Part shown: positions 1 to 23,715 of the stretch, in pieces
How the letters are laid out: every line of letters begins with the position of its first letter
Numbering within the stretch: the first letter of the stretch is position 1
DNA from: Mobula hypostoma
Lineage: Eukaryota
Direction of reading: 5' to 3'
NCBI RefSeq assembly: GCF_963921235.1
Contig: NC_086128.1
Coordinates: 15,562,001 to 15,626,000, forward strand
DNA: 64,000 nt
Position numbers and translations under genes: made by a program
Notes under the pieces: model-generated
Told to the model about the DNA's origin: nothing
What the model saw: the letters and a program-made list of their open reading frames with translations, nothing else
The model's database searches: none

Positions 1-597
1 TGTTTTTTTTTTCATTCATTTACAGAAAGTGAACATCCTACAGGAAATAAATATATTTTCAGAACAGCATTTATTCTTTTGAATTATTTAGATGCCTAAC
101 TACCACCAATATCTGAAAGTTTTAAGGGCCCTTGAAAACATCAGTAGCCAAAACGCCATCAGGGTGGTTCTCTGGCAGGGCCTTTGTTTCCACTGTCTAC
201 ATCCTGTGGCCTGCTCCATCTTACGTAACAGCTACAAAAGGGAGACTGCCAGGACTAGTGAGCTGCGTGGTACGTAGACACTGCGCAAGAGATGAATGTG
301 AAGTGCAGACCAGCTCCAGCATCCACTGACTCGGTCAAACATATGGGATGGGAAGAGGATGAGAAAGTGGAGCTGAGGCCAAGATCAGGCAGCCATGATA
401 CTGTAGAATTGTGACCCTGTAGTGACAGAGACTGGGAGGAGACATGTGGACATGACAGAGGGTTGCAGATGGTGGGATCTGATAGGAGATGAAGGTGAAA
501 CATGGAACCGAATAAGGGAGGTGGGGAGGGCAGTATGGTGGAAGTTCCAGGTGTCAGGGAGCATGAAATGTGTGAAGTTTTGAGGAAGTAGAGAGGC

Positions 598-1460
598 TAC
601 AGAAGGACAGACAGATTAGGAGAATAGACAAAGAAATGGCAGATGGAACACAGTTTGGGGAAGTGTATGGTCATGCACTTTGGCAGGAAAAAATGAAAGG
701 GTTGACTATTTTCTAAATGGGGAGAAAATAGAAAAAACTGAGATGCAAAGGGACTTGGGAGTCCTTGTGCAGGATTCCCTGAGGGGTAACTGGCAGGCTG
801 AGTCTGTGGTGAGGAAGGCAAATGCAATGTTGGCATTCATTTCAAGAGGACGAGATTATAAAAGCAAGGTTGTAATATTGAGACCTTATAAAGCACTGGT
901 GATGCCTCACTTGGAATATTGCGAGCAGTTTTGGGCCCCTTATCTTAGAAAGGAAGTGCGGAAACTTGAGAGGATGCAAAGATCGCTCACACAAAAGATT
1001 TCAGGATTAAACGCTTGTCATATGAAGAATGTTTGATGGCCTGGGCCTGTATTCACTGGAATTCAGAAGAACGAGGAGTCACCTCATTGAAACCTATCAA
1101 ATGGCGAAAGACCTTGATAGAGTGGACGTGGAGAGTATGTTTCCTATGATGGGAGAGTCTAAGACCAGAGGACACAGCCTCAGAATAGAGGGGTGTCCTT
1201 TTAGAATGGAGGTGAGGAGGAATTTCTTTAACTAGAGTGGTGTATCTGTGGAATTCTTTCCCACAGACAGCTGTAGAGGCCAAGAGTTTACGTATATTTA
1301 AGGCAGAGGTTGATAGATTCTTGATTGGTCAGAGCATGAAGGGATTTGGGGGCAGATGGGCAGGAGACTGGGGCTGAGAGGAAAATTGGATCAGCCATGA
1401 TGACATGGCGGAGCAGACTCGATGGGCCAAATTCCCTAATTCTGCTGCTATATCTTATGG
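598..1460 (+). mobile_element. 5'-truncated CR1 LINE (RT C-terminus and 3' UTR)
   Basis: RDLGVLV...KANAMLAFISRG...[21 protein letters not shown]. It interrupts a degenerate Penelope remnant (about 420-597 and 1465-1590). Confidence 0.88.
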
Positions 1461-1950
1461 TTTTAAACTACCCATAGGGAATATGAGGTGCTGTTCCTCT
1501 AGCATGATCCTAGCAATTCAGGAGTCCAGGGCAGTCAGGTCGGTATGGGAATTCGGAGGGCAAGTAAAATGACCGGGAACCGGGAGCTGCTTCCAAAATG
1601 TCCCAGCATGCCTTGCAATGCTGGAGATACTCTGAATCTACCACCTACCTGTACAATGTATCTCAACCACCGTGGGTCAGGTGGGTTGGGCAGTCAAACT
1701 GACACTTAATGGTCGTTTCTCCGCTCTTGATCGGCGTTGCTTGAGCAACTGGAGGGAGCTCTTCTTGTTTCCCGGACTCGCTCATTCTTGCTGACGCCAG
1801 TTTGGCCCGAGGCACCGAGAGCGGTTACCGTGCACAAGCGGACAGGTTGGAACCCATGGGAGAGGGTGTGCCGAGCTCCTCCTCTATCTCGATGTCACCA
1901 TGCCCATTTCTGTCAGCTGACACCCCGACCAAGCCCAGATCCGCACTGCT

Positions 1951-1957
1951 CATAAAA
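1951..1957 (+). promoter_or_regulatory. TATA-like box (CATAAAA) of gene A
   Basis: About 100 nt upstream of the ATG (Kozak-like CACCATGA) in a CpG-rich region, with CACCC-type boxes upstream. Confidence 0.6.
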
Positions 1958-2052
1958 GCAGCTCAAAGCCGCTCTCACCTGCGCCAGCAGTTCAGATCGG
2001 GACTGATCGCTCCAGCAAACTCGTAACCAGAGAACAAAACTCTAATTTCACC

Positions 2053-5000
2053 ATGAGCGTCCCTTACACCCAAAGGTCCTTTAGACAGACCACGCAGCTT
2101 TCAGGCGGCCCATCGATGCGGTCTAGTGTTGCCGGCTCCGTGGGGTCGTCGCGAAGAATTAGTAGCAGAAAGGCGATGAGTGTGTCTGGAGCTGGAATTG
2201 GAACAGGTATCGGAGGGTCAAGACGTATGCTTTCTGGCTCATCGATCAAGCTTAGTTCAGGCTACAATTCAGGTTACGGTTCAGGTTTAAGGTCAAATTT
2301 CAGTTCTAGTTCGATGATGCCGGCCCTTGATCTAAGCGCCCCACTACCACAAAATGACACCAGTCTGCAACAAGTTCGTATGCAGGAAACGAGGGAGCTG
2401 ACTACGCTCAACAACCAGTTCGCAAGTTTCATAAACCAGGTACCGTACCGTATCCAGCTCTGTCTGTAACCCGCTGCTGCGCCTGTCTTGGCAGCATTGT
2501 GCAAATGTCTCTTTTCACTTCCTCGCCAGCTCAATGCAAAAATCTAAGCGTGTGTTCATTCCTCACCCGCAGGTTCGCCTTCTCGAACAGCAAAATGCTC
2601 AGCTGAAGGTCAAACTGGAGCTTCTGAAGAGGCAGGGGACCTACACCTCCAACATCGATAACATGTTCCAAACTTACATTGACAACCTCAAGAGGCAACT
2701 GGAAACTCTTGGGCAGGAGAAGCTGAAGTTCGAATCGGACCTTGTGCAGATGCAAGGTCTAGTTGAGGACTTTAAGGGCAAGTAAGTGTACTGTCTCCCA
2801 CCAGGATTTCCCAACTCGTCCCGTATCTGTTCACTGGTTCAGAGAAAAAAAAAGAGCGGAATCGGGCAAATCGTGGGCGGGGTAAACGTTCGAACAATTC
2901 CCGGTTACAATCAGCTATTTTCCATTGGGTTTCTTTGTAACCTAACAGCAGCTAGTGGAGGTCTGGAAGCTGGGTCGGGCAAGTGCCCGTCGGGGAGAGC
3001 TCCGTTAAGACTGAGGTCTGGATAGAGAGGTGTCACTCAGAGCTCAGGGAGTCACCGAAATAGCCGTCAGTTCAGGGACGGCAGCGTATGTTGTTTCATT
3101 CCGTCGAGGCGCGGCACGGTCGACCTGTCTGGCGTAGCGGGATGCTGTGTCTTGCGGAATCAAATGTCAGGAAGAGCGGTGCACACACGGGGATAAATAG
3201 AAGTGTGAGGAAATCATGGCTAAGCAGCAGGGAGCAGGGAGTTCCGACAACCAGCATGGCCCTGTCGAAGAAATGGGACAGAAATGTTGATTTCCAAGGG
3301 ATTGCCAGTAACGTCAGTGGTTCATTTCAGATACGAAGATGAAATTAACAAGAGAACTGAAATGGAAAACGAGTTTGTCATGGTGAAGAAGGTGAGCACT
3401 ATTTTCTAGCTCTCTGCAGGACCATATCAGTGGTCTTCAATAGATTTACAAACCTTGTGCCCTACTCTCTCCAGGATGTTGATGAATCCTACATGAACAA
3501 GGTGGAATTGGAAGCAAAACTAGAAAGCCTGACTGATGAAATTGAATTCCTGAAGACAATCTTCCAAGAGGTAAATATGCTACATGGTGCAAGAGCCTTC
3601 TGGTCCTTTTGCTGTTCAATTCCATCTCCTTACACTAGTTTTGCTCTGCCCATCTTTAGGAAATCCGTGAGCTGGAGTCACAGATTCAGAACACTGCTGT
3701 CAGCGTGCAGGTGGACACTAGCCGCAACCTGAACATAGACCAGATCATCAGTGAAGTCAAGGCCCAATACCAAAGTATGGCAGATAAATGCCGTGATGAT
3801 GCCGAGAACTGGAAAAAGGCGAAGGTGAGCTCCAGCTCCAGCCCCACGTAGAAGTGCATTGATAGCTCTGACCTCTGTGCTGGGAGGAGAAACCCTTACT
3901 GACGTCTACCAGTGTCTCCTTGCAGATGGTGGAACTCAGCACAATGCCTGGAGGTCATGCGGAAGAAGTGCGAGTGATCAAATCGGAGTGTAATGATCTG
4001 CAGAATCGCATCCGTAAGCTGACTGGGGACATCGAGTATCTGAAGCAGCAGGTAAGTCAGGAAGTGAAAGCAAACAAGAGATCTTGGTTGCGGCCTAACG
4101 ACGGTAGCAAAATGTCTTTCCTCTCAAGTCCCGAGTTCTAATGCAGCGACACGACCCAAATGGTCAATAATTCTTTTTGCCTTCACGGATGCTACTTCAC
4201 CCGCTGATCTTCTGCAGTAGTTCTGCTATTTTCTTACTCCAGACTGCAGCATCTGCCGTCTCTTGCATCTGCACTTTTCTCTTCCCAGCCCAAAGCAAAT
4301 GACCAAGAGACAGCTGAAACACAGGTCAATCTGAGCTAAATCATACACTGGGGAACTTTCAGTAGTAACAACCTGGCTGGTTCCTTCCACTGTAACCCTG
4401 GTGAACTCGATTACTCCTAAGCCAATCTGCAATACTCTACTCTCAGTATGGCTCTTTCCGATAGCAGGGTGGGGATGTTGGCAAGGCTTCATGTTATAAT
4501 CTGCAAAAATGTCCACACTAACCTCTGTGTGACTCAGCGTTTGAAACTGGAGGCTGCGATCGCTGAAGCAGAGGAACGTGGCGAGATGTCTCTCAAAGAC
4601 AGTAAACAAAATATCGTTGATCTGCAAGAAGCCATCAGGAAAGCAAAACAGGAGATTGCCAAGCAAACTCGTGAAATCGACGAGCTGATAAATGTCAAGC
4701 TGGCTCTGGATATCGAAATTAACACCTACAGTAAACTACTGGCGCAAGAGGAAATCAGGTAGGGCTTTGGTCTTTTCCAAGTTGCAGATATCACACTGGG
4801 TTGATGCCACAGTCCTGCGTACTTGCAGATTACAATCTGTACAGGCTCTTTATTGCACTCTTCATTCCTAGAGTCTTTGTCTTTAATGGGGCATTTGGTC
4901 CAGGGAGCGGCACTTACTTTTGTTTAAAGGCTGGTTTTCATCTGACCCCAGAAATACATCAGACTCACTCTCCGAATGAACATCTAGTCAGTGATTCAGT

Positions 5001-8000
5001 CACCACTAGGTGAACTCTCCCCTGATGCTGCAGTGGATGAAGCATTGTACAACATAAGCAGGCTGACGAATAGCTCCCTGCGCACACTGACGAGGCTACT
5101 GCTGTTCACCAGCAGCACTGGAACTTACAGAATCAGTGTCTCGGGCAAGGCTCGACAGAGTCAATGTGCCCATCAACTTCACCCATGCAGCTCATTGCTG
5201 CTTTCAGAAGGAAACCCTTGGTAACTTGAAAAAGATATATTTCTGAACATCCTAGAAATGGCTGTTGTTACACAAGTGTTTCCTTTATCAACAGGATGGT
5301 AGAAGGCGTCAAAACCCTCAGCGTCCAACAAGTTTCACAGCAAGGTAAGAGAACGTATAATCCTTGCTTGAGATTTTAACTACTGACCAAAACACAAAAC
5401 GCAAAATGAAAAATGGAATATTCTGGAAATATTCTTCGTTCTTCTCCAAGTCTTGATACCTCATTGTTCTGTTTACAAATCATTCTGTTGTACATTTTCA
5501 GAGCAGTGGTACTCATTTCTGTGATTGTATTTCTTATGAATGTTTTCCAAATGATTTTCCTGAATTGATATCATCAATGGTTCACTGTCCTTTGTTGCTC
5601 TCTTCTCCCTTTCACATGCTCTAAAATTACTCTTCCCAAAAAAGGCTCACATTTAACATTTCCTTCTTATAAATCAACACCCTCTTTGACATCTTTCTGT
5701 TGCCTTCAGTCCTCAAATGTCCCGTTGCGTCCTAAATTGGGGTTGAATGACACCCTGACACCCCATACGATTGTGACCATGGTCAGCAATGCCTCTTTGT
5801 CCTTTCTTTACCTGTCTGCAACAAAAGATGCCATTGCTTGTTTAATCATCGTCCAATGATAGGAAACAGCTTCTTACCCCAGGCCATAAGACGAATGAAT
5901 TCCCTGCCACCTCTCAGGTCTCATCACACATGAAGCACCAGTAGCGTTATACTGTTTACTTTTTAACTTGTGTTGTCAATGCACCCTTATTATTTGTTAA
6001 TTTATTTGTGGCTATATTACTTTATGTGTTCTGTGCCAGTTGTATATACCATGTTGTGCACTTTGGTAGGAGTACTGTTTCGTTTGGCGGTATACATGTG
6101 TACGATTGAATGACAATAACCTTGAACTTGAACAATGCTTCACCTTTGAATAGTCCTTCCCTGTTCTCATTTGGTAGGCAGATTATTTCCTATAATCCAA
6201 AGTCTGCAAAGGCCTATTTCTCACCTATGATCATGATCTCAGTGATAGCATCCAAAACCGAGCATCGCATTCCTCTGATACTGTGAAAAAATGCAGATGC
6301 TACAAATATGAAATTTAAAAATTACACTGGAAATACGCAGCAGGCCAGGTAGCATCCAAGGGAAGAGCAATAGAGTCAATGTTTCATGTCAAAAGTCGCT
6401 CATCAGAACTGAGAAAGAAAGAAAGTAAGAGTTTTAAGTTGCCAGGAAGGTGGGGGACAGGTCAATAGGACCAAGGGAGTATCTCAGATAGGGGGAAGCC
6501 AAGATTGCTATTTAGATAAGTTGTTGGCGTCACCCAGTCGACGGGTTAATCGGGGCAGTTAGAGAGTGAGAATACAAAGAGAGGAGCTTGACAAGGTGTG
6601 AAATGTCAGGCTGTCTGACGTGTCCAGTCGGCCAGGCCTACTTTTAAAGTGAGGTAAATCAGTGTGCAAATAGAGGAATTAAGTTCCCTTATGTCGCCGT
6701 ACTCAGTTTCAAGTGGAGAAGGCAGCAACATGGCCCAGACAGAAAATGAGTTGCAAAGCGCATGTTGGTCCTCCTTATATCAGCATATTATAAATTGAAT
6801 ATTAGAAATTGAAGCCACAGACAGAGGTCAGAGTGGGAGATGGATGGAGAGTTAAATAGGCAACAAAAGGGAGCTTTGGTCACTCCTGGTGCTCTGCAAT
6901 GTTGTCACTCCGTCTGCAGCTGGTGGAGGAAACCACACTGTGAACACTGAGTGCAAGACACTAGATTGAAAGAAGTGCAAGTGAATTGTTGCTCCAACTT
7001 GAGGGACTGTTTGCATCCCCAGACACTGGGAAGGAAAGAGGTGAACGGACAGGTGTAGCATCTCCTGTAATTTCACAAAACACGCAGTGACATTGGGATA
7101 GAAGACAGTTGCCCAGGGAATCACAAAGGGAACAGTCTCGTTTACATGATGAAAGGCAGGGAAGGTATGGACGTATCCAGTTGTGGAATATTGTGGAAGC
7201 TGGTGCAAATTGTAAAGGATGAGCTGTTAAACACTGAGCTGGTGAGGTGGAAGATAATGACTAGAGGATCTCTGTCCTTGCTCTGTCTGACAGGTGAGGG
7301 ATGGAGAGCAGAGATGCAGGAAATAGATGAACTACGGCCAAAAACTCCATTGACTGTGGTAGAGGAGAAAGTACAGGTCATGGTAGAAGTCATTTTAGAA
7401 ACACATGAAAGTCTTTAACAATTCCTGCAATAAGTTTATTTTCAATCAAAGCTACCGTAGTCTTAGTGGCCACTCTTATTAGGTACCTGCTCATGGTCTT
7501 CTGTTGCTGTAGCACATCCACTTCAAGGTTTAACCATTATGTGCCTTTCAGATGCTCTTCTGCACACCACTGTTGTGACACGTAGTAATTTGAGTTACTG
7601 TCGTCTTCCTGTCAGCTTCAACCAGTCTGGCCTTTCTCCTCTGACTTCTCTCATCAACAAGGCTTTTTCACTCACAGAACTTCCACTCACTGATTGTCCT
7701 TGTTTTGTGTACCATTCTCTGTAAACTCTAGAGACTGTTGTGCACGAAAATCCCAGGAGACCAGCAGTTCTTGAGATACTCAAATTATCCCGTCTGACAC
7801 CAACAATCATTTGGGTCAACGTCACTTCGGTTACATTTCTTCCCCCATCTGATGTTTGATCTGAACAACTGAACCTCTTGAACATGTCTGCATGCCTTTG
7901 TGCACTGAGTTGCTGCCACATAATTGACTGATTAGATATTTGCATGAGCCAGCAGGTGTACAAGGTGTGCCTAATAAAGAGGCCACTGAATGTATGTTGT

Positions 8001-9263
8001 CCATTTTATAAATTATTCTACCCCCCATCATCTTTTGTGCTCACTGACTTATAGAAACATAGAAAATAGGTGCAGGAGTAGGCCATTCGGCCCTTCGAGC
8101 CTGCACCACCATTTATTATGATCATGGCTGATCATCCAACTCAGAACCCCGCCACAGCCTTCCCTCCATACCCCCTGACCCCCGTAGCCACAAGGGCCAT
8201 ATCTAACTCCCTCTTAAATATAGCCAATGAACTGGCCTCAACTGTTTCCTGTGGCAGAGAATTCCACAGATTCACCACTCTCTGTGTGAAGAAGTTTTTC
8301 CTAATCTCGGTCCTAAAAGGCTTCCCATCTATCCTCAAACTGTGACCCCTCGTTTTGGACTTCCCCAACATCGGGAACGATCTTCCTGCATCTAGCCTGT
8401 CCAATCCCTTTAGGATCTTATACGTTTCAATCAGATCCCCCCGTCAATCTTCTAAATTCCAACGAGTACAAGCCCAGTTCATCCAGTCTTTCTTCATATG
8501 AAAGTCCTGCCATCCCAGGAATCGATCTGGTGAACCTTCGTTGTACTCCCTCTATGGCAAGGATGTTTTCCTCAGATTAGGGGACCAAAACTGCACGCAA
8601 TACTCCAGGTGTGGTCTCACCAAGGCCTTGTACAACTGCAGTCGTACCTCCCTGCTCCTGTACTCGAATCCTGTCGCTATAAATGCCAGATAAATGCTAT
8701 AAATATTGGCTCCTAAACTGATATACCTCAGTTTTAGGATCTGAGTCTTCAAATCTTTCCATAGCATTGATCTTCCCTATCTCTGTAAACGACTCTGCAC
8801 ACCCTGAGCCATGACTGATGGGATGCCACTCATGGATAAGTAGTTCCTACATTTCAGTGATTTCTTTCTCAAAATTTCATTTCCACCTTTTTTCTCTTTC
8901 CTGTAAAATTTATCATTTCAAAATGCTTTGATATATCTGTATACATAAAATCTTAGAGTCAAGCATTTGCTTACTAAAAGTTACCTGAAGCACTTGGGGC
9001 TGTCTTTCTCTGTTAAGATTGCGACCTGCTTGATGTCATTGCAATTGTTTTCTCAATTTCAGGATCCATATTCTAAAGTGTCTTTTTCCTTTCCTCTCCC
9101 TTTTACAGGAAGTTTTGGGGATTTCAGCAGCGCAAGTAGTGGTATGTCTGGCTACCTCAAAGGGGGCAGTGAGATGGAAACTGGTGGAAAAAGAGCAGTA
9201 ATTCTGAGCTCAGTGCAGCAGACCTCTACAAGCAGAAGTGGATCTTCAATCAATCAGTTATAA
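2053..9263 (+). CDS. Type II keratin (K8-like), gene A; 9 exons, 489 aa
   Basis: Exons 2053-2439, 2573-2781, 3331-3391, 3475-3570, 3660-3824, 3926-4051, 4538-4758, 5295-5344, 9109-9263. All introns are GT-AG and the joined frame is open (1470 nt). Exons 2-7 are 209/61/96/165/126/221 nt as in type II keratins. Motifs [67 protein letters not shown]. Confidence 0.92.
5865..6133 (+). mobile_element. Rex1/Babar-type LINE 3' tail
   Basis: Encodes the ORF end [12 protein letters not shown], then a 3' UTR ending in (cttgaa)n. Confidence 0.5.
6280..7400 (-). mobile_element. Degenerate Penelope-like element in gene A intron 8
   Basis: [29 protein letters not shown] aligns with ISRTSALTPSSRHPTRNRVPLVLTYHPTS of the younger copies. 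Decayed hammerhead at about 6373-6410. Confidence 0.7.
7460..7992 (-). mobile_element. Non-autonomous Tc1 derivative
   Basis: TA-flanked TIRs (agtggccactcttattaggtac / cctaataaagaggccactga). Transposase HTH remnant [33 protein letters not shown]. Confidence 0.85.
8052..8692 (-). mobile_element. Young 5'-truncated CR1 LINE
   Basis: [27 protein letters not shown], (ttctatgt) tail. Very similar to 52035-52698. Confidence 0.9.
9109..9263 (+). CDS. Gene A terminal exon 9 (tail [15 protein letters not shown]...[24 protein letters not shown])
   Basis: Long polypyrimidine tract plus CAG acceptor at 9106-9108. Phase fits exon 8. Gly/Ser-rich tail, AATAAA at 9605. Confidence 0.85.
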
Positions 9264-9604
9264 ACTACTGTCAGTTATGTCTCTGGTGACTCTCTTGCCA
9301 GTTTTTATACTTCATTCACATAGCCTGTTCAGTGAAGTGGTTAACTTGTTTAGATTAACTTTCTGCCTGATCTTGGAATTCTACTCAATTTTACATCGTT
9401 AAGCAACATGAAATTAACTGATACACAGCAAACGTCAAGTTAGTCTGTAACTTGGGTTTGTGGGAAAAGTGGAAAGTTCATCCTTTACTTCTTGGGCCTT
9501 TGAATATAGGAAATTAATCAAAGTTTTAGATGTGGTGCTCTGATTTGTGATTTTGACTCACTTTATGTTGGGGATTTATCTTTTGTGGCATTTCTGTAAT
9601 ACTG

Positions 9605-9610
9605 AATAAA
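9605..9610 (+). terminator. Poly(A) signal of gene A
   Basis: AATAAA about 340 nt after the stop codon, followed by T-rich sequence. Confidence 0.6.
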
Positions 9611-9865
9611 CTGAAATTTTTGAATCTGCCAATCTGGACTCTTTCTTTCCTTAAGCACATTATTCAAGTACTGAAAAGAGAAACCATCATACCTTTGTCA
9701 GAAATTCAAGAACTTTGAAATAATTTGTAAGTTAGAGGAAGGTTACTGAAAAAAACATAAAATATGTCTAAAACTATCACACAAGTCCAAGCATAGCAGC
9801 CAGCTAGCTCCTCCTTCACCAAAGAAGTTACTTTTACATTGTCTTAGAGAACATATTTATCGACT

Positions 9866-10132
9866 TATTGAGATACAGCGCGGAACAGGCCCTTTGAGCC
9901 CTTCAAGCCATATTGCCCAATTTTTAACACTAGCCTAATCATGGGACAATTTACAATGACCAATTAACCTACCGACCTGTACGTCTTTGGACTGTGGGAG
10001 GAAACTGGAGCACCCGGAGGAAACCCACGCGGTCACAGTGAGAACATACAAACTCCTTACAGGCAGTGGCGGGAACTGAACCTCAGTTGTCTACACTGTA
10101 AAGCATTGTGCTAACAACTGCACTACAGTGCC
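9866..10132 (-). mobile_element. tRNA-derived V-SINE (HE1-like)
   Basis: Minus strand has a tRNA-like head, the V-domain gcgtgggtttcctccgggtgctccagtttcctcccacagtccaaagacgt, and a CR1-like tail. Confidence 0.8.
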
Positions 10133-10444
10133 ATTGGAATCTGATAAAAAAATTTTAATCGCATGAATATTCTCCTTTCTCTCAAGAGTTCTGAGCATCG
10201 TAAAGGCTGCCCAGTTGAAAGGTATAGTGAGAGACACAAAGGATCAGAACAATCCCATGGGAAACAGTCCAAGTTGAATGAGGAAAGTAACCTTCATCTA
10301 TGGGCAGTGAGCGTCCTGGATGAAACAGTCTCTCACCTGTTTCAAGTTAGTATAGGCCTGCAATTTCCAATCTCCAGTTTACAAGAAGAACTACAAAGCA
10401 TATCCATAGAAAGTGATAGTACAAGAGATTAGGGTAATAAAATA

Positions 10445-11870
10445 GGTGTAGGTTATGCTTGCCTTCATTGGTCAGGGTATTGAGTTAAAGTTGGCAAATC
10501 AGTTGTAGCTACACAAAACTTTGGCTAGGCCACATTTGGAGTATTTTGTCCCATTCTGGTTTCTGCACTGCAGGAAGAATGGAAGGACTTTGGACCGAGA
10601 ATGTATAAGAGATTCGCCAGGATGCTGTATGGATTGGAGAGTATTCGATGTGTTGGTGGCTGAGGGGGCGACATGATAAAGAGTATATAAAATTATGAGA
10701 GGTAAAGATCGGGTAACTAATCAGAGTTTTTTACCAGGTGGAAATGTCAAATATTGGAGGACATACGTAGATTTAAGGTGAAAGTAGGAAAGTTTAAAGA
10801 AAATGTACAAGTCAGGTTCTTTATACAGAGAGTGGTGGATGCCTAGAATGTGCTGAAACACTGGTTGTTGGAAGTAGACAGGATATGAACATTTTAGAAC
10901 CACTTATGCAGCCACGTGAACAGGCAGGGAATGTAGACAATTTGCAGGAAGATAGGATGAATTGAAAATTGGAAATCACTAACAAAACAAATTACAACGG
11001 GAGATAAACAAGGCATCTCAAAGGGCAAAGTGACAATAGTCAGATTTCAATATGCAGATAGATTGGGAAAATCAAGTTGATGCTGGATTCCAAGAGAGGA
11101 TTTGTAGATTGCGGACAAGATGGCCCTTTTAAAGAATGTGGTGCTTGAGCCCACTAGGGAAAAAGGCTATTCTGGAATGGGTTTTGTGTAATGAACCAGA
11201 TTTGATGAGGAAGCTTAAAGTAAAGGAACCCTTATGAGACAGTGATCATAATATGATAGAATTCACCCTGCAATTTGAGAGGGAGAAGCTAAAGTCAGAT
11301 GTATCAGTATTCCAGTGGAGTAAAGGGAATTACAGAGGCATGAGAGGGGTGCTGGCCAAAGCTGATCGGAAGGAAACATTAGCAGGGATGACGGCAGAGC
11401 AACAATGGTTAGAGCCTCTGGGAGCAATTTGGAAGATACAGGACAGATACATCCCAAAGAAGAAATATTCTAAAGGCAAGTGGCTGACAAGAGAAGTCAA
11501 GGCCGACATAAGAGCAAAACACAGGGCATATAATAGAAGGAAAATTAGTGGGAAACTTGAGGAGTGGGAAGCTTTCAGAAATCAACAGAAGGCAACTAAA
11601 ATAGCCATAAGGAGCTAAAAAATGAGCTACAAAGGTAAGCTAGCCAACAATATCAAAAACGATATCAAAAGTAGCCTCCCATAGTGCGTGAGTCTCAGAG
11701 CAGAGGGTATACACTCAGGATAGAGGGACGTCCATTTAGAATGAAGATTAGGAGAGATTTCTATAGCCAGGGGGTGGTGAATCTGTGGAATTTGTTGCCA
11801 TAATTGGCTGTGGAGGCCAGGTCATCAGGTGTATTTAAGGTGGGGGTTCATAGATTCTTGATAACTCAGA
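10445..11870 (+). mobile_element. Cluster of degenerate CR1 fragments
   Basis: SDHNMIEFTLQFERE...WLTREVKA (EN-RT linker) plus two 3' RT remnants. Confidence 0.75.
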
Positions 11871-11893
11871 GCATCCAGATAGTATGTTTTATA

Positions 11894-12598
11894 TGTAAGG
11901 GGTTTCTTCTTTTATGTCTTCTTTTATGGCTTCTTTGTTATGTTATAATTAAAATGGCTTCTTTGTTATGTTAAATGCTGAGAAAGTTCTCTCGCTCACA
12001 GCTTGTTTGGGTTATCATGTTGATAAGAGAACAAATGAACCAGTGGGCATCCACGTTATTCTTTCTAGTGTGTCTGTAAGTTATTATGATGCGTGGGTTT
12101 TTGGGGAGAAGGCGCGATGGACACAGAGAGGATGGACAATCTGCTGTGAGCTGGCTAACGGGGTCGGACCCGAGCAGGAGTCCAAGGTCGGGGGTCTTCG
12201 GTGAGGAGAGGAGACGGCGACAGACTCGTGTGGAGCGTCTGGTCGACCACCGTGGTTGGTCCCAGGCGGCACGTCGGAGTGGTCAGAGGGGAACGAATGG
12301 TGAAGAGAGGATCGTTACTAGAGCTCCAACTGTTTGTGCATGAAGAGATTGAACTTTGATAAGTGTGGCGCCTTTTATTTCCTTTTTATATTTTATGTCT
12401 ATTCATTATATAGTTCCAGTAATCTCTATAAACTGTCATTCATTTTATCATATATGGTGTATTGTCTGTTATTTGGCGGGGTGGGGTACATCACACAGCA
12501 TCCACGAAAACTTAATTACCCAGTTTGGCGGGGCCGAGGGCTGTTTCCCGAGATGACAGAAAGTTGAGCGACCCTAAGGCTTGCCAGGGGGGCTTACA
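11894..12598. mobile_element. Solo LTR (probably Gypsy)
   Basis: Ends TGTAAG...CTTACA, 705 bp, flanked by TATA/TACA (4-bp TSD with 1 mismatch), no internal coding sequence. Confidence 0.72.
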
Positions 12599-14970: not shown

Positions 14971-14998
14971 ATAAGTAAATGTTCTTGGCGTTTGTGTA

Positions 14999-15002
<4 letters not shown>

Positions 15003-15030
<28 letters not shown>
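15003..15030. repeat. (TG)n microsatellite
   Basis: Read directly from the sequence. Confidence 0.9.
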
Positions 15031-15464: not shown

Positions 15465-15632
15465 ACTGAGCCAATAGGCTGGTCCTGGACTTATTTCATA
15501 ATTTACTGGCATAATTTACATATTACTATTTAAATATTTATGGTTCTATTACTATTTATTATTTATGGTCCAACTGTAACAAAAACCAATTTCCCCTGCG
15601 ATCAATAAAGTATGACTATGCCTATGACTATT
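15465..15632 (+). mobile_element. Rex1/Babar 3' UTR fragment with (tatgac)n tail
   Basis: Homologous to 38888-39047, 41228-41418 and 26383-26560 (minus). Confidence 0.7.
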
Positions 15633-17939
15633 ATTAGCTTCCAAATGAGACCAAATTGGAGAGGACCTGCTGCATTGTGCATCTGAAGAGAATTTGACGC
15701 CAAGCAGCTCAGCATGGTTGGAGAAAACACAGACACCCAGACATTGTCTTTACTTCCCACAAAGAAAGTGGCATTGTGATCGCACAAAAAGAAAATCACA
15801 CTTTCGGAATTCTCCAAGATCTGTTGTTAGATCTATTGGACATCAGGTGCCCTTGATCAAATCCAAGCAGAAATGTCATTGGAGGCATATTAGACAGTTT
15901 TGCAACACATATAGAGGCAAATATGAAGCATGTTCAACTTGTGACCTCAGTCAACTGCTTCGCCAAATCGGTAATTAAAGCACAGGGAAAGCTTGTGAGG
16001 GAAGATATATGCTACATTAGCCAATTGGCATAGCTTTTCCAAATTGTAGCAAGAGGGTAATAAAAGGCAACAATTCTGATGGACACAGAGAGACAAAGAC
16101 AATAACATATAATAGGCAAGAATTGTGAACATCTTTGTGCGGTATCATGAATAATGCACTAACCTGGAAGACCTCTGTCCTGGTAGAAAACTCCAAACAT
16201 TTCTTTGGAACCCGAGATACTTTGTAAACATGGGTTGCAATGTTTTTTACAGTTTCAAATATATTTATACAAACAATGTTGATTAACAACTTAAAAAAAA
16301 TGTATTGACCTTCTAGGGTATGTGCTTTCTGTTTAGAAATCTTTATATCTCCTTGATGTGTCAATCATGGTGCATAATAACAAATTGCACCATTTCAAGT
16401 TCAAGTTAATGGAATTCACACAGCCATCTCCATTTATGAAATGTTGCTTGAAAAAATGCTTTTCAGGGTCAAATCCCTTTCATTAGACAATCACTACCTA
16501 TATTCTGACACATAAATTGATGCGATTAAGCATTAACACTGATCAGTCGTATTGGAGTATTTCAGCATAAATTTACAGCAAATGAAGCATTTGTAGTGTT
16601 GCACCCGTCAGGAGAAACAATTTTTTTTCTGTAGTTAGCAATTTTCATCACACGCAGCTGAGTTCTTGCACCAACGAGTGGGTTCCTCTGAAACCCAGGT
16701 TTCAGACCGACCTGAATGAGGACATGAAGTCCAGGAGGTTTCTCACATTCTTTCCGACCCCTGTGCCACAAAACCATCAAGTACGGTAAATATATGATGG
16801 TATTGCATCAGTTAACAAGATAATCCTTTTGAGACAGCAGAAAATAATGTTTGCTGAAAATTCTATACATCTAAGAGAATTACCGCATAATGGTCTTTGG
16901 GCCCTTAGCATTTCTCCGGAATAATGATGCAACCAGTTACTCTCTGTCAACGTGAGAAAATCTGCAGATGCTGGAAATCCTGAAGAAGGGTTTCAGCTTG
17001 AAATATCAACTGTTTACTCCTTTCCGCAGATGCTGCCTGCTGAGTTCCTCCAGCATTTTGTGTGTGCAGTCCTCTGTCAACACTGTTCCTCTGCCTGGCA
17101 GAGCATGTCCTTACCCTTAATAACTTCTCTTTTGATTCCTCCCACTTTCCACAAGCAAAGGTGTAGTCAAGGGCACACTCATAGGCCCCAGCTAAGGCTA
17201 CATGCACCAGTCCTTACTCCAAAGCTACTCTGGCCTTTCAGCCTACACGAGCATAGAGGTTTCACCTAGCAGGACCGCAGTCATTTTAATTGTGCTGCTT
17301 CCCTTCATTAAAATGACAACTTTGCTTACTTTAGTGAATATTTGTATTTTTTTTCATTCATTTACAGAAAGTGAACATCCTACAGGAAATAAATATATTT
17401 TCAGAACAGCATTTATTCTTTTGAATTATTTAGATGCCTAACTACCACCAATATCTGAAAGTTTTAAGGGCCCTTGGAAACATCAGTAGCCAAAACGCCA
17501 TCAGGGTGGTTCTCTGGCAGGGCCTTTGTTTCCACTGTCTACATCCTGTGGCCTGCTCCATCTTACGTAACAGCTACAAAAGGGAGACTGCCAGGACTAG
17601 TGAGCTGCGTGGTACGTAGACACTGCGCAAGAGATGAATGTGAAGTGCAGACCAGCTCCAGCATCCACTGACTCGGTCAAACATATGGGATGGGAAGAGG
17701 ATGAGAAAGTGGAGCTGAGGCCAAGATCAGGCAGCCATGATACTGTAGAATTGTGACCCTGTAGTGACAGAGACTGGGAGGAGACATGTGGACATGACAG
17801 AGGGTTGCAGATGGTGGGATCTGATAGGAGATGAAGGTGAAACATGGAACCGAATAAGGGAGGTGGGGAGGGCAGTATGGTGGAAGTTCCAGGTGTCAGG
17901 GAGCATGAAATGTGTGAAGTTTTGAGGAAGTAGAGAGGC

Positions 17940-18802
17940 TACAGAAGGACAGACAGATTAGGAGAATAGACAAAGAAATGGCAGATGGAACACAGTTTGG
18001 GGAAGTGTATGGTCATGCACTTTGGCAGGAAAAAATGAAAGGGTTGACTATTTTCTAAATGGGGAGAAAATAGAAAAAACTGAGATGCAAAGGGACTTGG
18101 GAGTCCTTGTGCAGGATTCCCTGAGGGGTAACTGGCAGGCTGAGTCTGTGGTGAGGAAGGCAAATGCAATGTTGGCATTCATTTCAAGAGGACGAGATTA
18201 TAAAAGCAAGGTTGTAATATTGAGACCTTATAAAGCACTGGTGATGCCTCACTTGGAATATTGCGAGCAGTTTTGGGCCCCTTATCTTAGAAAGGAAGTG
18301 CGGAAACTTGAGAGGATGCAAAGATCGCTCACACAAAAGATTTCAGGATTAAACGCTTGTCATATGAAGAATGTTTGATGGCCTGGGCCTGTATTCACTG
18401 GAATTCAGAAGAACGAGGAGTCACCTCATTGAAACCTATCAAATGGCGAAAGACCTTGATAGAGTGGACGTGGAGAGTATGTTTCCTATGATGGGAGAGT
18501 CTAAGACCAGAGGACACAGCCTCAGAATAGAGGGGTGTCCTTTTAGAATGGAGGTGAGGAGGAATTTCTTTAACTAGAGTGGTGTATCTGTGGAATTCTT
18601 TCCCACAGACAGCTGTAGAGGCCAAGAGTTTACGTATATTTAAGGCAGAGGTTGATAGATTCTTGATTGGTCAGAGCATGAAGGGATTTGGGGGCAGATG
18701 GGCAGGAGACTGGGGCTGAGAGGAAAATTGGATCAGCCATGATGACATGGCGGAGCAGACTCGATGGGCCAAATTCCCTAATTCTGCTGCTATATCTTAT
18801 GG
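17940..18802 (+). mobile_element. CR1 LINE fragment (duplicate of 598-1460)
   Basis: Identical translation. Confidence 0.88.
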
Positions 18803-19292
18803 TTTTAAACTACCCATAGGGAATATGAGGTGCTGTTCCTCTAGCATGATCCTAGCAATTCAGGAGTCCAGGGCAGTCAGGTCGGTATGGGAATTCGGAG
18901 GGCAAGTAAAATGACCGGGAACCGGGAGCTGCTTCCAAAATGTCCCAGCATGCCTTGCAATGCTGGAGATACTCTGAATCTACCACCTACCTGTACAATG
19001 TATCTCAACCACCGTGGGTCAGGTGGGTTGGGCAGTCAAACTGACACTTAATGGTCGTTTCTCCGCTCTTGATCGGCGTTGCTTGAGCAACTGGAGGGAG
19101 CTCTTCTTGTTTCCCGGACTCGCTCATTCTTGCTGACGCCAGTTTGGCCCGAGGCACCGAGAGCGGTTACCGTGCACAAGCGGACAGGTTGGAACCCATG
19201 GGAGAGGGTGTGCCGAGCTCCTCCTCTATCTCGATGTCACCATGCCCATTTCTGTCAGCTGACACCCCGACCAAGCCCAGATCCGCACTGCT

Positions 19293-19299
19293 CATAAAA
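19293..19299 (+). promoter_or_regulatory. TATA-like box (CATAAAA) of gene B
   Basis: Identical copy of 1951-1957. Confidence 0.6.
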
Positions 19300-19394
19300 G
19301 CAGCTCAAAGCCGCTCTCACCTGCGCCAGCAGTTCAGATCGGGACTGATCGCTCCAGCAAACTCGTAACCAGAGAACAAAACTCTAATTTCACC

Positions 19395-22300
19395 ATGAGC
19401 GTCCCTTACACCCAAAGGTCCTTTAGACAGACCACGCAGCTTTCAGGCGGCCCATCGATGCGGTCTAGTGTTGCCGGCTCCGTGGGGTCGTCGCGAAGAA
19501 TTAGTAGCAGAAAGGCGATGAGTGTGTCTGGAGCTGGAATTGGAACAGGTATCGGAGGGTCAAGACGTATGCTTTCTGGCTCATCGATCAAGCTTAGTTC
19601 AGGCTACAATTCAGGTTACGGTTCAGGTTACGGTTCAGGTTTAAGGTCAAATTTCAGTTCTAGTTCGATGATGCCGGCCCTTGATCTAAGCGCCCCACTA
19701 CCACAAAATGACACCAGTCTGCAACAAGTTCGTATGCAGGAAACGAGGGAGCTGACTACGCTCAACAACCAGTTCGCAAGTTTCATAAACCAGGTACCGT
19801 ACCGTATCCAGCTCTGTCTGTAACCCGCTGCTGCGCCTGTCTTGGCAGCATTGTGCAAATGTCTCTTTTCACTTCCTCGCCAGCTCAATGCAAAAATCTA
19901 AGCGTGTGTTCATTCCTCACCCGCAGGTTCGCCTTCTCGAACAGCAAAATGCTCAGCTGAAGGTCAAACTGGAGCTTCTGAAGAGGCAGGGGACCTACAC
20001 CTCCAACATCGATAACATGTTCCAAACTTACATTGACAACCTCAAGAGGCAACTGGAAACTCTTGGGCAGGAGAAGCTGAAGTTCGAATCGGACCTTGTG
20101 CAGATGCAAGGTCTAGTTGAGGACTTTAAGGGCAAGTAAGTGTACTGTCTCCCACCAGGATTTCCCAACTCGTCCCGTATCTGTTCACTGGTTCAGAGAA
20201 AAAAAAAGAGCGGAATCGGGCAAATCGTGGGCGGGGTAAACGTTCGAACAATTCCCGGTTACAATCAGCTATTTTCCATTGGGTTTCTTTGTAACCTAAC
20301 AGCAGCTAGTGGAGGTCTGGAAGCTGGGTCGGGCAAGTGCCCGTCGGGGAGAGCTCCGTTAAGACTGAGGTCTGGATAGAGAGGTGTCACTCAGAGCTCA
20401 GGGAGTCACCGAAATAGCCGTCAGTTCAGGGACGGCAGCGTATGTTGTTTCATTCCGTCGAGGCGCGGCACGGTCGACCTGTCTGGCGTAGCGGGATGCT
20501 GTGTCTTGCGGAATCAAATGTCAGGAAGAGCGGTGCACACACGGGGATAAATAGAAGTGTGAGGAAATCATGGCTAAGCAGCAGGGAGCAGGGAGTTCCG
20601 ACAACCAGCATGGCCCTGTCGAAGAAATGGGACAGAAATGTTGATTTCCAAGGGATTGCCAGTAACGTCAGTGGTTCATTTCAGATACGAAGATGAAATT
20701 AACAAGAGAACTGAAATGGAAAACGAGTTTGTCATGGTGAAGAAGGTGAGCACTATTTTCTAGCTCTCTGCAGGACCATATCAGTGGTCTTCAATAGATT
20801 TACAAACCTTGTGCCCTACTCTCTCCAGGATGTTGATGAATCCTACATGAACAAGGTGGAATTGGAAGCAAAACTAGAAAGCCTGACTGATGAAATTGAA
20901 TTCCTGAAGACAATCTTCCAAGAGGTAAATATGCTACATGGTGCAAGAGCCTTCTGGTCCTTTTGCTGTTCAATTCCATCTCCTTACACTAGTTTTGCTC
21001 TGCCCATCTTTAGGAAATCCGTGAGCTGGAGTCACAGATTCAGAACACTGCTGTCAGCGTGCAGGTGGACACTAGCCGCAACCTGAACATAGACCAGATC
21101 ATCAGTGAAGTCAAGGCCCAATACCAAAGTATGGCAGATAAATGCCGTGATGATGCCGAGAACTGGAAAAAGGCGAAGGTGAGCTCCAGCTCCAGCCCCA
21201 CGTAGAAGTGCATTGATAGCTCTGACCTCTGTGCTGGGAGGAGAAACCCTTACTGACGTCTACCAGTGTCTCCTTGCAGATGGTGGAACTCAGCACAATG
21301 CCTGGAGGTCATGCGGAAGAAGTGCGAGTGATCAAATCGGAGTGTAATGATCTGCAGAATCGCATCCGTAAGCTGACTGGGGACATCGAGTATCTGAAGC
21401 AGCAGGTAAGTCAGGAAGTGAAAGCAAACAAGAGATCTTGGTTGCGGCCTAACGACGGTAGCAAAATGTCTTTCCTCTCAAGTCCCGAGTTCTAATGCAG
21501 CGACACGACCCAAATGGTCAATAATTCTTTTTGCCTTCACGGATGCTACTTCACCCGCTGATCTTCTGCAGTAGTTCTGCTATTTTCTTACTCCAGACTG
21601 CAGCATCTGCCGTCTCTTGCATCTGCACTTTTCTCTTCCCAGCCCAAAGCAAATGACCAAGAGACAGCTGAAACACAGGTCAATCTGAGCTAAATCATAC
21701 ACTGGGGAACTTTCAGTAGTAACAACCTGGCTGGTTCCTTCCACTGTAACCCTGGTGAACTCGATTACTCCTAAGCCAATCTGCAATACTCTACTCTCAG
21801 TATGGCTCTTTCCGATAGCAGGGTGGGGATGTTGGCAAGGCTTCATGTTATAATCTGCAAAAATGTCCACACTAACCTCTGTGTGACTCAGCGTTTGAAA
21901 CTGGAGGCTGCGATCGCTGAAGCAGAGGAACGTGGCGAGATGTCTCTCAAAGACAGTAAACAAAATATCGTTGATCTGCAAGAAGCCATCAGGAAAGCAA
22001 AACAGGAGATTGCCAAGCAAACTCGTGAAATCGACGAGCTGATAAATGTCAAGCTGGCTCTGGATATCGAAATTAACACCTACAGTAAACTACTGGCGCA
22101 AGAGGAAATCAGGTAGGGCTTTGGTCTTTTCCAAGTTGCAGATATCACACTGGGTTGATGCCACAGTCCTGCGTACTTGCAGATTACAATCTGTACAGGC
22201 TCTTTATTGCACTCTTCATTCCTAGAGTCTTTGTCTTTAATGGGGCATTTGGTCCAGGGAGCGGCACTTACTTTTGTTTAAAGGCTGGTTTTCATCTGAC

Positions 22301-23715
22301 CCCAGAAATACATCAGACTCACTCTCCGAATGAACATCTAGTCAGTGATTCAGTCACCACTAGGTGAACTCTCCCCTGATGCTGCAGTGGATGAAGCATT
22401 GTACAACATAAGCAGGCTGACGAATAGCTCCCTGCGCACACTGACGAGGCTACTGCTGTTCACCAGCAGCACTGGAACTTACAGAATCAGTGTCTCGGGC
22501 AAGGCTCGACAGAGTCAATGTGCCCATCAACTTCACCCATGCAGCTCATTGCTGCTTTCAGAAGGAAACCCTTGGTAACTTGAAAAAGATATATTTCTGA
22601 ACATCCTAGAAATGGCTGTTGTTACACAAGTGTTTCCTTTATCAACAGGATGGTAGAAGGCGTCAAAACCCTCAGCGTCCAACAAGTTTCACAGCAAGGT
22701 AAGAGAACGTATAATCCTTGCTTGAGATTTTAACTACTGACCAAAACACAAAACGCAAAATAAAAATGGCAATTTTTGGTTGGACTTTGATCACTCCTCA
22801 GTTGTAATGAGAAAAGAAAGGCTGGCATTTCACATTCTCACCTTTCCATTAGTTGTGAATACTGATTGATTGTTTTTCAATCTTGAACTCATTATGTTCT
22901 ATTTTTCAGAGGTTTCTGGTTCTGATCAGTATTTCCAGCATTGTCTGGCTTCTTTTATCAATTATTATTAAAACAGATAAAAATTCTGTACATACAGCAG
23001 TCTGAAATTTTAATTCAGCACCCTTGAAGGAAATATCACGTAAACCTTTGAATCTTAAAAATAAGCTGTATTTGTCACATATACATCAAAACAGAGAGAG
23101 AGATGCATCGTTTGTGTCAAATCACATCAGTAAGGATTGTGCTGAGGGCACAAGTTTTGCCATGGTTGTGGCGCCCACATGCCACGCCAACAACTTACTA
23201 ACTCCAACTGTAATGTGTTTGGAGTGTGGGAGAAACCCAGGATACCAGATGAAAAGCCATCAGCATCACAGAGAGAACGTACAAACTCCTTACAGCAATG
23301 GGAATTGAGCCCCGATCAGTGAGAGCTGGCACTGATTGCGCTAACTGCTAGACTACTGTGCTACCCTATTATTAAGGCAGTTATACTTAATGACAAGATC
23401 AACAACTGTTTAGCGATGGCTGAAGAAGCCATTTCTTCTCATACTGTTTTGGATAAGTTCTTTGCAGTTTTCAAAGTGCTGTTGCAAATGTATGAAGGAT
23501 ATTGAATAATTTTCATGAAAGAATCATAAGTGTTAAATTTGAATATTTAAAATATAGGTAACTATGGCAACTCCGCTTATCAGAGTGGTCTGGGTGCAAT
23601 GGAAACGTCTCGCATCGCAGGACAACGAACAGAATCCTCTAAGAACATACTGGTGAAAACAGTGGAGCAGTTGGATGGTGTTACAGTTTCATCAACAATA
23701 AGTGCTTTGCAATAA
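19395..23715 (+). CDS. Type II keratin (K8-like), gene B; 9 exons, 494 aa
   Basis: Exons 19395-19793, 19927-20135, 20685-20745, 20829-20924, 21014-21178, 21280-21405, 21892-22112, 22649-22698, 23558-23715. Exons 1-8 match gene A apart from a 12-nt insertion in the head; exon 9 is its own. Confidence 0.9.
23045..23363 (-). mobile_element. Degenerate V-SINE in gene B intron 8
   Basis: Head and V-domain align with 9960-10132; the 3' tail differs. Confidence 0.6.
23558..23715 (+). CDS. Gene B terminal exon 9 (tail [15 protein letters not shown]...[24 protein letters not shown])
   Basis: TAG acceptor at 23555-23557 with a weak pyrimidine tract and correct phase. [11 protein letters not shown] resembles the K8 C-terminal VVVKKIETRDG motif. 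AATAAA at 24146. Not in the ORF track. Confidence 0.82.

What the first reader, a model, noticed from the sequence alone, without database searches (positions are those of the whole stretch)
5345..5480. Sharp breakpoint ~63 nt into intron 8 predicts an anti-Lepore-type chimeric gene
Seen: identity ends at ...aaacgcaaaat (5407 / 22761). Only weak similarity follows: aaaaatggaatattctgg vs aaaaatggcaatttttgg, and tcttgatacctcattgttctgttt (5451) vs tcttgaactcattatgttctattt (22881). Inference: unequal crossover in intron 8 between gene B and an upstream paralogue Z would duplicate a ~17.3-kb unit. Gene A would then be B exons 1-8 plus Z exon 9, like anti-Lepore globins. The alternative is a >5.4-kb gene-conversion tract between two old paralogues.
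Basis: partly seen in the sequence, partly recalled or inferred. Interest (0 to 1): 0.75.

Follow-up and report, generated by a model that had tools for sequence, protein, structure and literature searches.

The report
Recombination edge between tandem keratin genes

Summary
Window 1-5416 and 17343-22769 differ by 2 substitutions, a 12-bp indel in exon 1 and a 1-bp indel at 5408. RNA contigs place the exon 8 donor at 5344|5345, so the break lies 63-72 nt into intron 8. Exon 8 is spliced to a private tail exon in each gene: 9A at 9109-9263 and 9B at 23558-23715. The two tails are only weakly homologous.

A hybrid made by recombination between paralogues fits. Read contigs of the source animal indicate a third module copy (Z, left of the window) and roughly 3:2 depth of module to A-type downstream. 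That is the anti-Lepore layout Z-A-B.

Two related species suggest the module belongs with the 9A tail, not with B. One, about 3.5% diverged, has module introns, A-type intron 8 and the 8→9A splice in the same RNA runs, while B-private sequence sits in other runs. The other, about 1.8% diverged, has a single-copy module whose contig stops at the same two edges. So the intron-8 edge is more likely where a module copy overwrote B's own 5' part, ending in a shared 30-nt island.

The left flank could not be read, so crossover versus conversion stays open. Earlier scan notes cover this same locus only, not other DNA.

The parts
1..5416 (+). Copy 1 of the near-identical block (gene A side): at least 2052 nt upstream including a LINE fragment (576-1416), exons 1-8, introns 1-7 and the first 72 nt of intron 8. 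Its left end runs off the window.
   Evidence: Self-BLAST and the difference list.
17343..22769 (+). Copy 2 of the block (gene B side).
   Evidence: 2 substitutions, a 12-bp indel and a 1-bp indel over 5.4 kb.
1726..5407 (+). Core module: proximal promoter from 327 nt before the ATG, exons 1-8 and the start of intron 8. It forms one unbroken k-mer contig in the source animal's reads, with branch points at both ends. A sister species has the same edges (about 1720-5416).
   Evidence: table 8: X1 record 1 (3682 nt, ends at 5407) and X8 record 23 (3698 nt, ends at 5416). The starts are computed from record coordinates and are uncertain by 12 nt because of the exon 1 indel.
5387..5416 (+). The last 30 nt of shared sequence before the break in A (in B: 22741-22769, lacking the G of 5408). 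In the sister species the module contig and the A-type downstream contig overlap by exactly these 30 nt. This is the proposed short island of identity in which the exchange ended.
   Evidence: table 8 (X8 records 23 and 24; X1 records 1 and 2 overlap at 5378-5407).
2053..9263 (+). Gene A, a keratin-8-like type II keratin of 489 aa. Exons: 2053-2439, 2573-2781, 3331-3391, 3475-3570, 3660-3824, 3926-4051, 4538-4758, 5295-5344, 9109-9263.
   Evidence: Introns 4-8 come from RNA joints. Introns 1-3 come from GT-AG sites and the open frame. Pfam Filament matches exons 2 and 7.
5345..9108 (+). Intron 8 of gene A (3764 nt). It is private to the A-type from 5417 onward and carries dispersed repeats at about 5900-6500 and 7491-8702.
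   Evidence: The joint 5342→9107 (cut +2) has depth 754 in X5 and 351 in X13. Repeats are shown by k-mer depth.
9109..9263 (+). Tail exon 9A (51 aa plus stop), with a canonical keratin tail end ([11 protein letters not shown]...). A poly(A) signal lies at 9605 and the RNA contig ends at about 9631.
19395..23715 (+). Gene B, 494 aa. Exons 1-8 are identical to A except for four extra head residues; the tail exon is private.
22699..23557 (+). Intron 8 of gene B (859 nt), private to B from 22770 onward.
   Evidence: acceptor AG at 23556-23557.
23558..23715 (+). Tail exon 9B (52 aa plus stop; ...[13 protein letters not shown]...). An RNA contig that runs off exon 8 continues with 24 nt that match 23562-23585 exactly.
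   Evidence: table 7 (X5 loose end at 5348).
2272..2273 (+). Site where gene A lacks 12 bp (one GYGS-type repeat unit of the head) that are present in B at 19614-19625.

Best explanation
The break is the 3' edge of a recombination module in a tandem cluster of keratin-8-like genes.

Shown:
- Genes A and B carry the same upstream DNA, exons 1-8 and the first 63-72 nt of intron 8.
- Beyond that point each gene has unrelated intron sequence and its own anciently diverged tail exon.
- Exon 8 is spliced to both tails in RNA contigs.

Inferred:
- The module (about 1726-5416) belongs natively with the 9A-type tail.
- In the lineage of this ray, a copy of the module replaced the original 5' part of the downstream paralogue, whose tail is 9B.
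- This was a non-reciprocal, conversion-type or template-switch event. Its right end fell in a roughly 30-nt stretch (5387-5416) that both paralogues already shared. This makes B the gene whose body is foreign to its tail.
- The cluster now holds three module copies: Z (left of the window), A and B. A is identical to B on its left and probably to Z on its right.
- That layout is what an unequal crossover (anti-Lepore type duplication) produces. However, the exchange could lie anywhere inside the identical module or at its 5' edge, not necessarily at this break.
- The functional result is two co-regulated keratins with the same head and rod but different tails.
For: 1. Block identity and a sharp end.

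2. Both splices are seen. Exon 8→9A appears in the same species (X5) and in a species about 3.5% diverged (X13). Exon 8→9B appears as a loose end that maps to 23562-23585. The tails are the same length and phase and weakly homologous (12 of 1000 shuffles reach the score), so they are old paralogous exons.

3. The A/B copies differ by 0.04%, while the module differs by 1.8% (35 of 1917 nt) from the sister species' contig. The identity is therefore younger than the species split.

4. In the sister species (X8) the module contig has depth 29.5 and the A-type downstream contigs have 24.9-29.9. There is no extra module copy, and no parallel contig of 90% or more likeness. Yet its contig ends at about 1720 and at 5416, overlapping the next contig by exactly 30 nt, as expected if another locus shares only that 30-mer. 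B-private sequence is present there (0.40 of words).

5. In the third species, runs X13-X16 hold the A-side stretch (0.28-0.37). X13 also has module introns 6 and 7 together with A-type intron 8. B-private words are held only by other runs, X28-X32.

6. In the source animal's contigs (X1) the module starts at 1726, although A and B are identical across that point. This implies a third left context. Depth is 19.8 for the module against 10.8-15.1 (mean 12.9) for A-type downstream. That fits 3:2 better than 2:1 or 3:1.

7. No remnant of another plus-strand keratin body exists in the window.

8. The only two A/B substitutions lie in the first 135 nt (p about 6e-4 for such clustering). This hints that perfect identity is a younger overlay on slightly older duplicated DNA.
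Against: - The left flank was not readable, so Z's structure rests on unchecked notes of the scan and on contig ends.
- Contig depth is a rough proxy; the tool itself warns it is no copy number. For the long-read source runs the noise allows 2:1.
- k-mer contigs link sequences over only 30 nt. Which body sits on which tail in the other species is therefore inferred from co-occurrence in runs, not seen directly.
- A conversion across bodies that seem more than 10-20% diverged is mechanistically unusual.
- The Z→A spacing derived from note s1-142452 (about 16.42 kb) differs from the A→B spacing (17.35 kb) by about 0.93 kb. A very recent clean tandem duplication would need an extra indel to explain this.
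- One RNA run of the same species (X27) holds B-private sequence (0.72) but not the shared intron 7 region. The assembled gene B does not predict this.
Confidence: 0.5

Rival explanations
1. An unequal crossover occurred exactly in intron 8 between gene B and an upstream paralogue Z. Exons 1-8 are native to B, and gene A equals B exons 1-8 plus Z exon 9. The 17.3-kb unit running from Z intron 8 to B intron 8 is duplicated.
For: - A is identical to B from at least position 1 up to the break, and unrelated after it.
- A lies upstream of B, with a Z-type gene further upstream (notes s1-142452 and s1-143941).
- The 3:2 depth in X1 fits two copies of A-type downstream.
- A shared 30-nt island at the break would be a natural crossover point.
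Against: - In the species about 3.5% diverged, the module's introns and the 9A splice co-occur in runs that lack B-private sequence.
- In the species about 1.8% diverged, the module is single-copy, so B's body there is something else.
- Z is not a 'different body': the X1 module contig has a third left context at 1726 and no internal break.
- Under a clean 17342-nt unit, Z's exon 7 should lie near -12.7 kb. The scan's note puts it at about -11.9 to -11.7 kb.
Confidence: 0.18
2. There was no gain of a gene. Z, A and B are three older paralogues, and two overlapping long gene-conversion tracts made them alike: A/B from left of the window to 5416, and Z/A from 1726 rightward.
For: - The identity edges are abrupt on both sides (note s1-143941).
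- The paralogues are far more alike than the orthologues (0.04% against 1.8%).
- The two substitutions cluster at the left edge.
- The Z→A and A→B spacings are unequal.
Against: - It needs two independent tracts of more than 4-5 kb that together mimic a crossover product.
- The sister species shows a single module copy, so a copy was gained in this lineage.
- X1 depth suggests A-type downstream is present twice at k-mer identity.
Confidence: 0.12
3. This is long-standing concerted evolution. The module has been kept identical between a 9A-type and a 9B-type gene in all these rays, by repeated conversion with fixed boundaries. The break is an old conversion boundary, and gene A arose by a recent crossover inside the module.
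For: The sister species' module contig ends at the same two places, about 1720 and 5416. Both tail contexts exist in three species.
Against: - The module contig in the sister species has the same depth as single-copy flanks (29.5 against 24.9-29.9), where 2:1 is expected.
- RNA runs of the third species that hold B-private intron sequence do not hold module intron 7 words.
Confidence: 0.12
4. This is an assembly artefact. Gene A, or the whole 17.3-kb repeat, is a false duplication of haplotypes, and the few differences are allelic.
For: - Two SNPs and one repeat-unit indel per 5.4 kb is what heterozygosity would give.
- Contig depth cannot rule out two module copies rather than three.
Against: - Contigs built from the raw runs contain both junction types. 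X1 record 2 spans 5378-5891, the module contig branches at 5407, and all sampled words of 4900-5900 and 22770-23770 are present.
- At least two module copies with different downstream DNA are therefore real.
- Both private regions occur in several other individuals and in two other species.
- A 3.7-5.4 kb repeat is shorter than typical long reads.
Confidence: 0.06

Closest known systems
Haemoglobin Lepore / anti-Lepore hybrids and the fixed HBB/HBD fusion genes of mammals (Gaudry et al. 2014, PMC4041002)
   Same: Tandem paralogues recombine out of register. [quoted passage not shown] The same mosaic can come from unequal crossover or from interparalogue conversion, and only copy number tells them apart (PMC4041002).
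   Different: Here the exchanged unit is the promoter plus eight of nine exons, so the hybrids differ only in the tail domain. All three genes carry the same body. Outgroup data indicate that the body is native to the upstream-type tail, so the gene with a foreign body is the downstream one. The crossover point is not shown to be at the visible break.
Concerted evolution by gene conversion in tandem gene families (my own knowledge: human gamma-globin genes, opsin LW/MW arrays, CYP21A2/CYP21A1P, CYP11B1/B2 hybrids; keratin-associated protein genes, PMC2528016)
   Same: Paralogues within a genome are far more alike than orthologues between species. Identity blocks have abrupt edges and include introns and flanking DNA.
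   Different: In the sister species the module appears single-copy. The identity therefore looks like a recent event in one lineage rather than long-term homogenisation.
Keratin 8-type type II keratins
   Same: Filament rod (Pfam PF00038 on exons 2 and 7), nine-exon layout, Gly/Ser-rich head and a short tail ending in a K8-like motif.
   Different: The rod-end motif reads [10 protein letters not shown] (already noted by the scan). Exon 8 is only 50 nt. The two genes differ only in the last exon.

Membership tests
Intermediate filament protein, type II keratin (K8-like) | Central coiled-coil rod matching the Filament profile | tested here: met
   PF00038 matches exon 2 (49.8 bits, profile positions 20-88) and exon 7 (65.5 bits, profile positions 242-311). 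Both exceed the 40-bit cut-off.
Intermediate filament protein, type II keratin (K8-like) | Complete open reading frame across spliced exons, with head, rod and tail | tested here: met
   The ORFs are 489 aa (A) and 494 aa (B). Five of the eight introns are supported by RNA joints.
Anti-Lepore-type hybrid gene (duplication product of unequal crossover) | The hybrid's 5' part is identical to the downstream parent | tested here: met
   Gene A's 1-5416 equals gene B's 17343-22769.
Anti-Lepore-type hybrid gene (duplication product of unequal crossover) | The hybrid's 3' part and the following spacer are identical to those of the upstream parent | tested here: inconclusive
   The left flank is not readable. 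Contig depth in the source runs (module 19.8, A-type downstream about 12.9) fits two copies, but the measure is noisy. The Z→A spacing derived from a scan note is about 0.93 kb shorter than the A→B spacing.
Anti-Lepore-type hybrid gene (duplication product of unequal crossover) | One more gene copy than the ancestral arrangement | tested here: inconclusive
   The sister species has the module at single-copy depth, against an inferred three copies here. There is no assembly of the sister species to count genes.
Anti-Lepore-type hybrid gene (duplication product of unequal crossover) | The visible break is the crossover point, with the body native to the downstream parent | tested here: not met
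   In a related species the module co-occurs with, and is spliced to, the 9A tail, in runs that lack B-private sequence. This evidence is indirect.
Interparalogue gene conversion tract | Paralogues more alike than orthologues over the tract | tested here: met
   0.04% between A and B, against 1.8% to the sister species' module contig.
Interparalogue gene conversion tract | Tract flanked on both sides by diverged but homologous sequence | tested here: inconclusive
   On the right, only the tail exons are still recognisably homologous and the intron sequence is not. On the left, the tract runs off the window. The two substitutions at 4 and 135 hint at an edge.

The most novel reading that the evidence does not exclude
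The body swap may be very recent and still segregating in the species. Some animals would carry gene B with the shared module, and others the original, different body on the 9B tail. One RNA run of the same species holds B-private sequence but not the shared intron 7, and another shows the reverse. The two short identity islands at about 1726 and 5387-5416 would then act as recurrent exchange points that let these rays shuffle keratin tails onto one body.
Probability: 0.12. Interest if true: 0.55.

Novelty: new member of a known kind. Interest (0 to 1): 0.35.

Why it matters
This is a clean natural example of domain shuffling in a structural gene family. One promoter, head and rod is paired with two old, different tail domains, and both versions are expressed. 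It shows how tandem keratin clusters gain isoforms. For annotators, it means the two genes can be told apart only by exon 9 and a 12-bp head indel, so short reads will mis-assign expression between them. Mechanistically it is a known process (non-allelic recombination, Lepore/anti-Lepore or conversion), so its value is as a well-delimited case and a possible copy-number polymorphism, not as new biology.

Tried and rejected
1. The candidate acceptors at about 5502 and 22908 that I first took for exon 9 were dropped once RNA joints showed the real tail exons at 9109 and 23558.

2. I tried to reach full-length proteins, and through them the left flank or other assemblies.
- A search of protein representatives with exon 1 gave only four weak hits: exon 1 fragments of other fishes and one unrelated repeat protein.
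- A homologue search with the 9B open frame found no candidate.
- This genome's proteins seem not to be in those collections, so the look-up of encoding contigs was not tried.

3. The search of earlier findings does not accept places left of the window, and word searches added nothing.

4. A TE insertion as the cause of the break was rejected. Depth right of 5417 is single-copy up to about 5700.

5. The 652-nt repeat at 8051-8702 was rejected as the cause of the unequal spacings. The X1 contig to its right starts inside the repeat (8650), with no alternative left context, so all A-type copies seem to have it.

6. Selection on coding sequence as the reason for identity was rejected. Introns and a LINE fragment are equally identical.

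Full report
**What is in the sequence**

A self-comparison of the window shows one long direct repeat. Positions 1-5416 match 17343-22769. The complete list of differences is:
- T/A at 4/17346
- A/G at 135/17477
- 12 bp present only in the second copy (19614-19625, after 2272 of the first)
- one extra G at 5408 in the first copy

After 5407/22761 eight more bases are shared, then nothing. A word-7 BLAST of 5301-17342 against 22655-36000 returns only dispersed repeats that also occur elsewhere in the window. The best local alignment of the 600 nt after the break scores 19, against 15.4 ± 2.3 for shuffles and up to 24.5 for unrelated window pieces. The sharp break is real. The "weak similarity" after it is not evidence of homology.

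**The genes**

Translated searches show two identical sets of intermediate-filament exons on the plus strand and a third, diverged gene on the minus strand at about 39953-56881. Exons 2 and 7 match Pfam Filament above the curated threshold.

RNA contigs of the same species (X5, another animal) and of a species about 3.5% diverged (X13) give introns 3571-3659, 3825-3925, 4052-4537, 4759-5294 and 5345-9108, all GT..AG. With three further GT-AG introns this gives a 489-aa keratin-8-like protein for gene A.

Exon 9A (9109-9263) encodes a typical keratin tail. The RNA contig ends about 20 nt after the AATAAA at 9605.

For gene B, an RNA contig that leaves exon 8 continues with 24 nt that occur once in the window, at 23562-23585. 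With the acceptor at 23556-23557 this gives exon 9B (23558-23715) and a 494-aa protein. The two tail exons have the same phase and almost the same length, and align weakly (12 of 1000 shuffles reach the score). They are old paralogous exons, not recent copies.

A and B therefore encode the same head and rod, apart from four head residues, with different tails.

**How old is the identity?**

Contigs of a sister species (X8) laid on 3500-9499 differ from the window by 35 substitutions and one indel over 3500-5416 (1.8%), and by 1.2-2.9% in the A-type intron. A and B differ by 0.04%. The identity is therefore much younger than the species split, or is being renewed.

The two substitutions both lie in the first 135 nt of 5407. 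The chance of that under uniformity is about 6e-4, or 1.2e-3 allowing either end. This hints that the perfect tract is a younger overlay and that slightly older duplicated DNA begins near the window's left edge.

**Evidence from read contigs**

These are k-mer contigs (k = 31), so they break wherever a sequence has two continuations, and neighbouring contigs overlap by 30 nt.

*Source animal (X1).* The module contig runs from 1726 to 5407, and the next contig starts at 5378. The right break is the A/B difference at 5408. The left break cannot come from A versus B, which are identical there. A third copy with a different upstream must exist. An unchecked note of this scan on the neighbouring window (s1-143941) describes exactly that: a keratin promoter copy switching abruptly from diverged to perfect homology, within 1641-2000 of my window. 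Because the contig is unbroken, the third copy (Z) must share the whole module.

Mean k-mer depth in X1 is 19.8 for the module and 12, 12.7, 13.8, 10.8 and 15.1 for A-type downstream contigs. The surplus of about 6.9 is what flows to the B-type junction. This fits three modules, two A-type downstreams and one B-type. It fits 2:1 less well and 3:1 poorly. The tool warns that such depths are no copy number, and for long-read runs the noise is large. I treat this as suggestive.

*Sister species (X8).* The module contig again starts at about 1720 (± 12) and ends at 5416. The A-type downstream contig starts at 5387, an overlap of exactly 30 nt. Depths are 29.5 for the module against 28.3, 29.9, 25.8 and 24.9 for the flanks. 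At about 30 checked positions no second contig of 90% or more likeness covers the module.

A branch without extra depth is what a de Bruijn graph shows when another locus shares only the 30-mer itself. B-private sequence is present in that species (0.40 of sampled words, about 2.9% divergence). The simplest reading is this:
- The module is single-copy in the sister species.
- The 9B gene there has a different body.
- The two paralogues share short islands of identity at the very places where the identity block of this ray begins and ends.

*Third species.* Four RNA runs (X13-X16) hold 0.28-0.37 of the words of 4900-5900. That is what full coverage at about 3.5% divergence gives. X13 contains module introns 6 and 7, A-type intron 8 pieces and the exon 8→9A joint. 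None of these runs is among the holders of B-private 22770-23770. Instead that stretch is held by four other runs of the same study (X28-X30 and X32, 0.15-0.24), which are not holders of the A-side stretch.

If the 9B gene of that species had the module, runs covering B's last intron should also hold module intron 7 words. The module therefore appears natively linked to the 9A tail, and the 9B tail to another body.

**Putting it together**

One of A and B must be a recombinant, because they share non-coding upstream DNA, introns and a LINE fragment, yet carry unrelated last introns and old, different tail exons. The outgroup data point to B as the gene whose body is foreign. A module copy replaced its own 5' part and stopped in the 30-nt island.

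With three module copies, A is identical to B on its left and probably to Z on its right. The cluster thus also has the layout of an unequal-crossover (anti-Lepore type) duplication.

Two two-step histories explain everything equally well:
- Conversion of B's body between the two islands, followed by a crossover inside the now identical modules.
- A crossover at the 5' island, followed by conversion of B from A, ending at the intron-8 island.

As Gaudry et al. stress for beta-globin hybrids, the same mosaic can arise by either route and only copy number separates them (PMC4041002).

**What does not fit**

- The scan's note on Z (s1-142452) is 221 letters long, exactly the length of exon 7. It lies 11667 letters before the window, giving a Z→A spacing of about 16.42 kb against 17.35 kb for A→B. 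A clean recent tandem unit would need a 0.93-kb indel.
- One RNA run of this species (X27) holds 0.72 of B-private words but is not a holder of the A-side stretch, and X12 shows the reverse. The first is not expected if B always carries the module. It could mean a separate transcript, preferential retention of B's last intron, or a polymorphic body.
- A conversion between bodies that look more than 10-20% diverged is unusual. A template-switch repair using the islands is an alternative I cannot test.

**Limits**

- Protein-based routes to other assemblies failed.
- Linkage in other species is inferred over 30-nt overlaps and run co-occurrence.
- Copy numbers rest on contig depth.

**Verdict**

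This is a real, well-delimited hybrid-gene junction in a tandem keratin cluster. It is a known kind of event.

Noticed in passing
window 8051-8702: A 652-nt repeat in gene A's intron 8 belongs to an extremely abundant family (summed k-mer depth above one million). It is absent from the sister species, whose contig joins 8050 directly to 8703, so it is a lineage-specific insertion.
   Followed up: partly
window 2272 / 19614-19625: Gene B has one more 12-bp unit (four residues, GYGS-type) in the Gly/Ser/Tyr repeat of the head than gene A. Apart from exon 9, this is the only coding difference between the two genes.
   Followed up: yes
window 39953-56881, minus strand: A third intermediate-filament gene lies here, about 50% identical to A in the rod. 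It has much longer introns and a tail ending in a K8-like [10 protein letters not shown] motif.
   Followed up: partly
window 4900-5900 and 22770-23770 (run lists): RNA runs hold these two stretches in partly exclusive sets. In this species, X12 holds only the A side and X27 only the B-private side. In a related species, four runs hold one stretch and four others hold the other. This suggests tissue-specific use of the two tail types, or a polymorphism.
   Followed up: partly
left of the window (from scan note s1-142452): The upstream copy's exon 7 lies about 16.42 kb before gene A's. A→B is 17.35 kb, so the two repeat units differ by about 0.93 kb.
   Followed up: no
window 9961-10131 and 23191-23361: The same SINE-like element (67% identity) lies downstream of both genes. 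It is the only similarity between the two private regions, and it is a dispersed repeat, not homology.
   Followed up: partly
window 23558-23561 versus 5345-5348: Exon 9B begins with GTAA, the same four bases that begin intron 8. Spliced and unspliced reads therefore look alike for four extra bases at this junction.
   Followed up: yes
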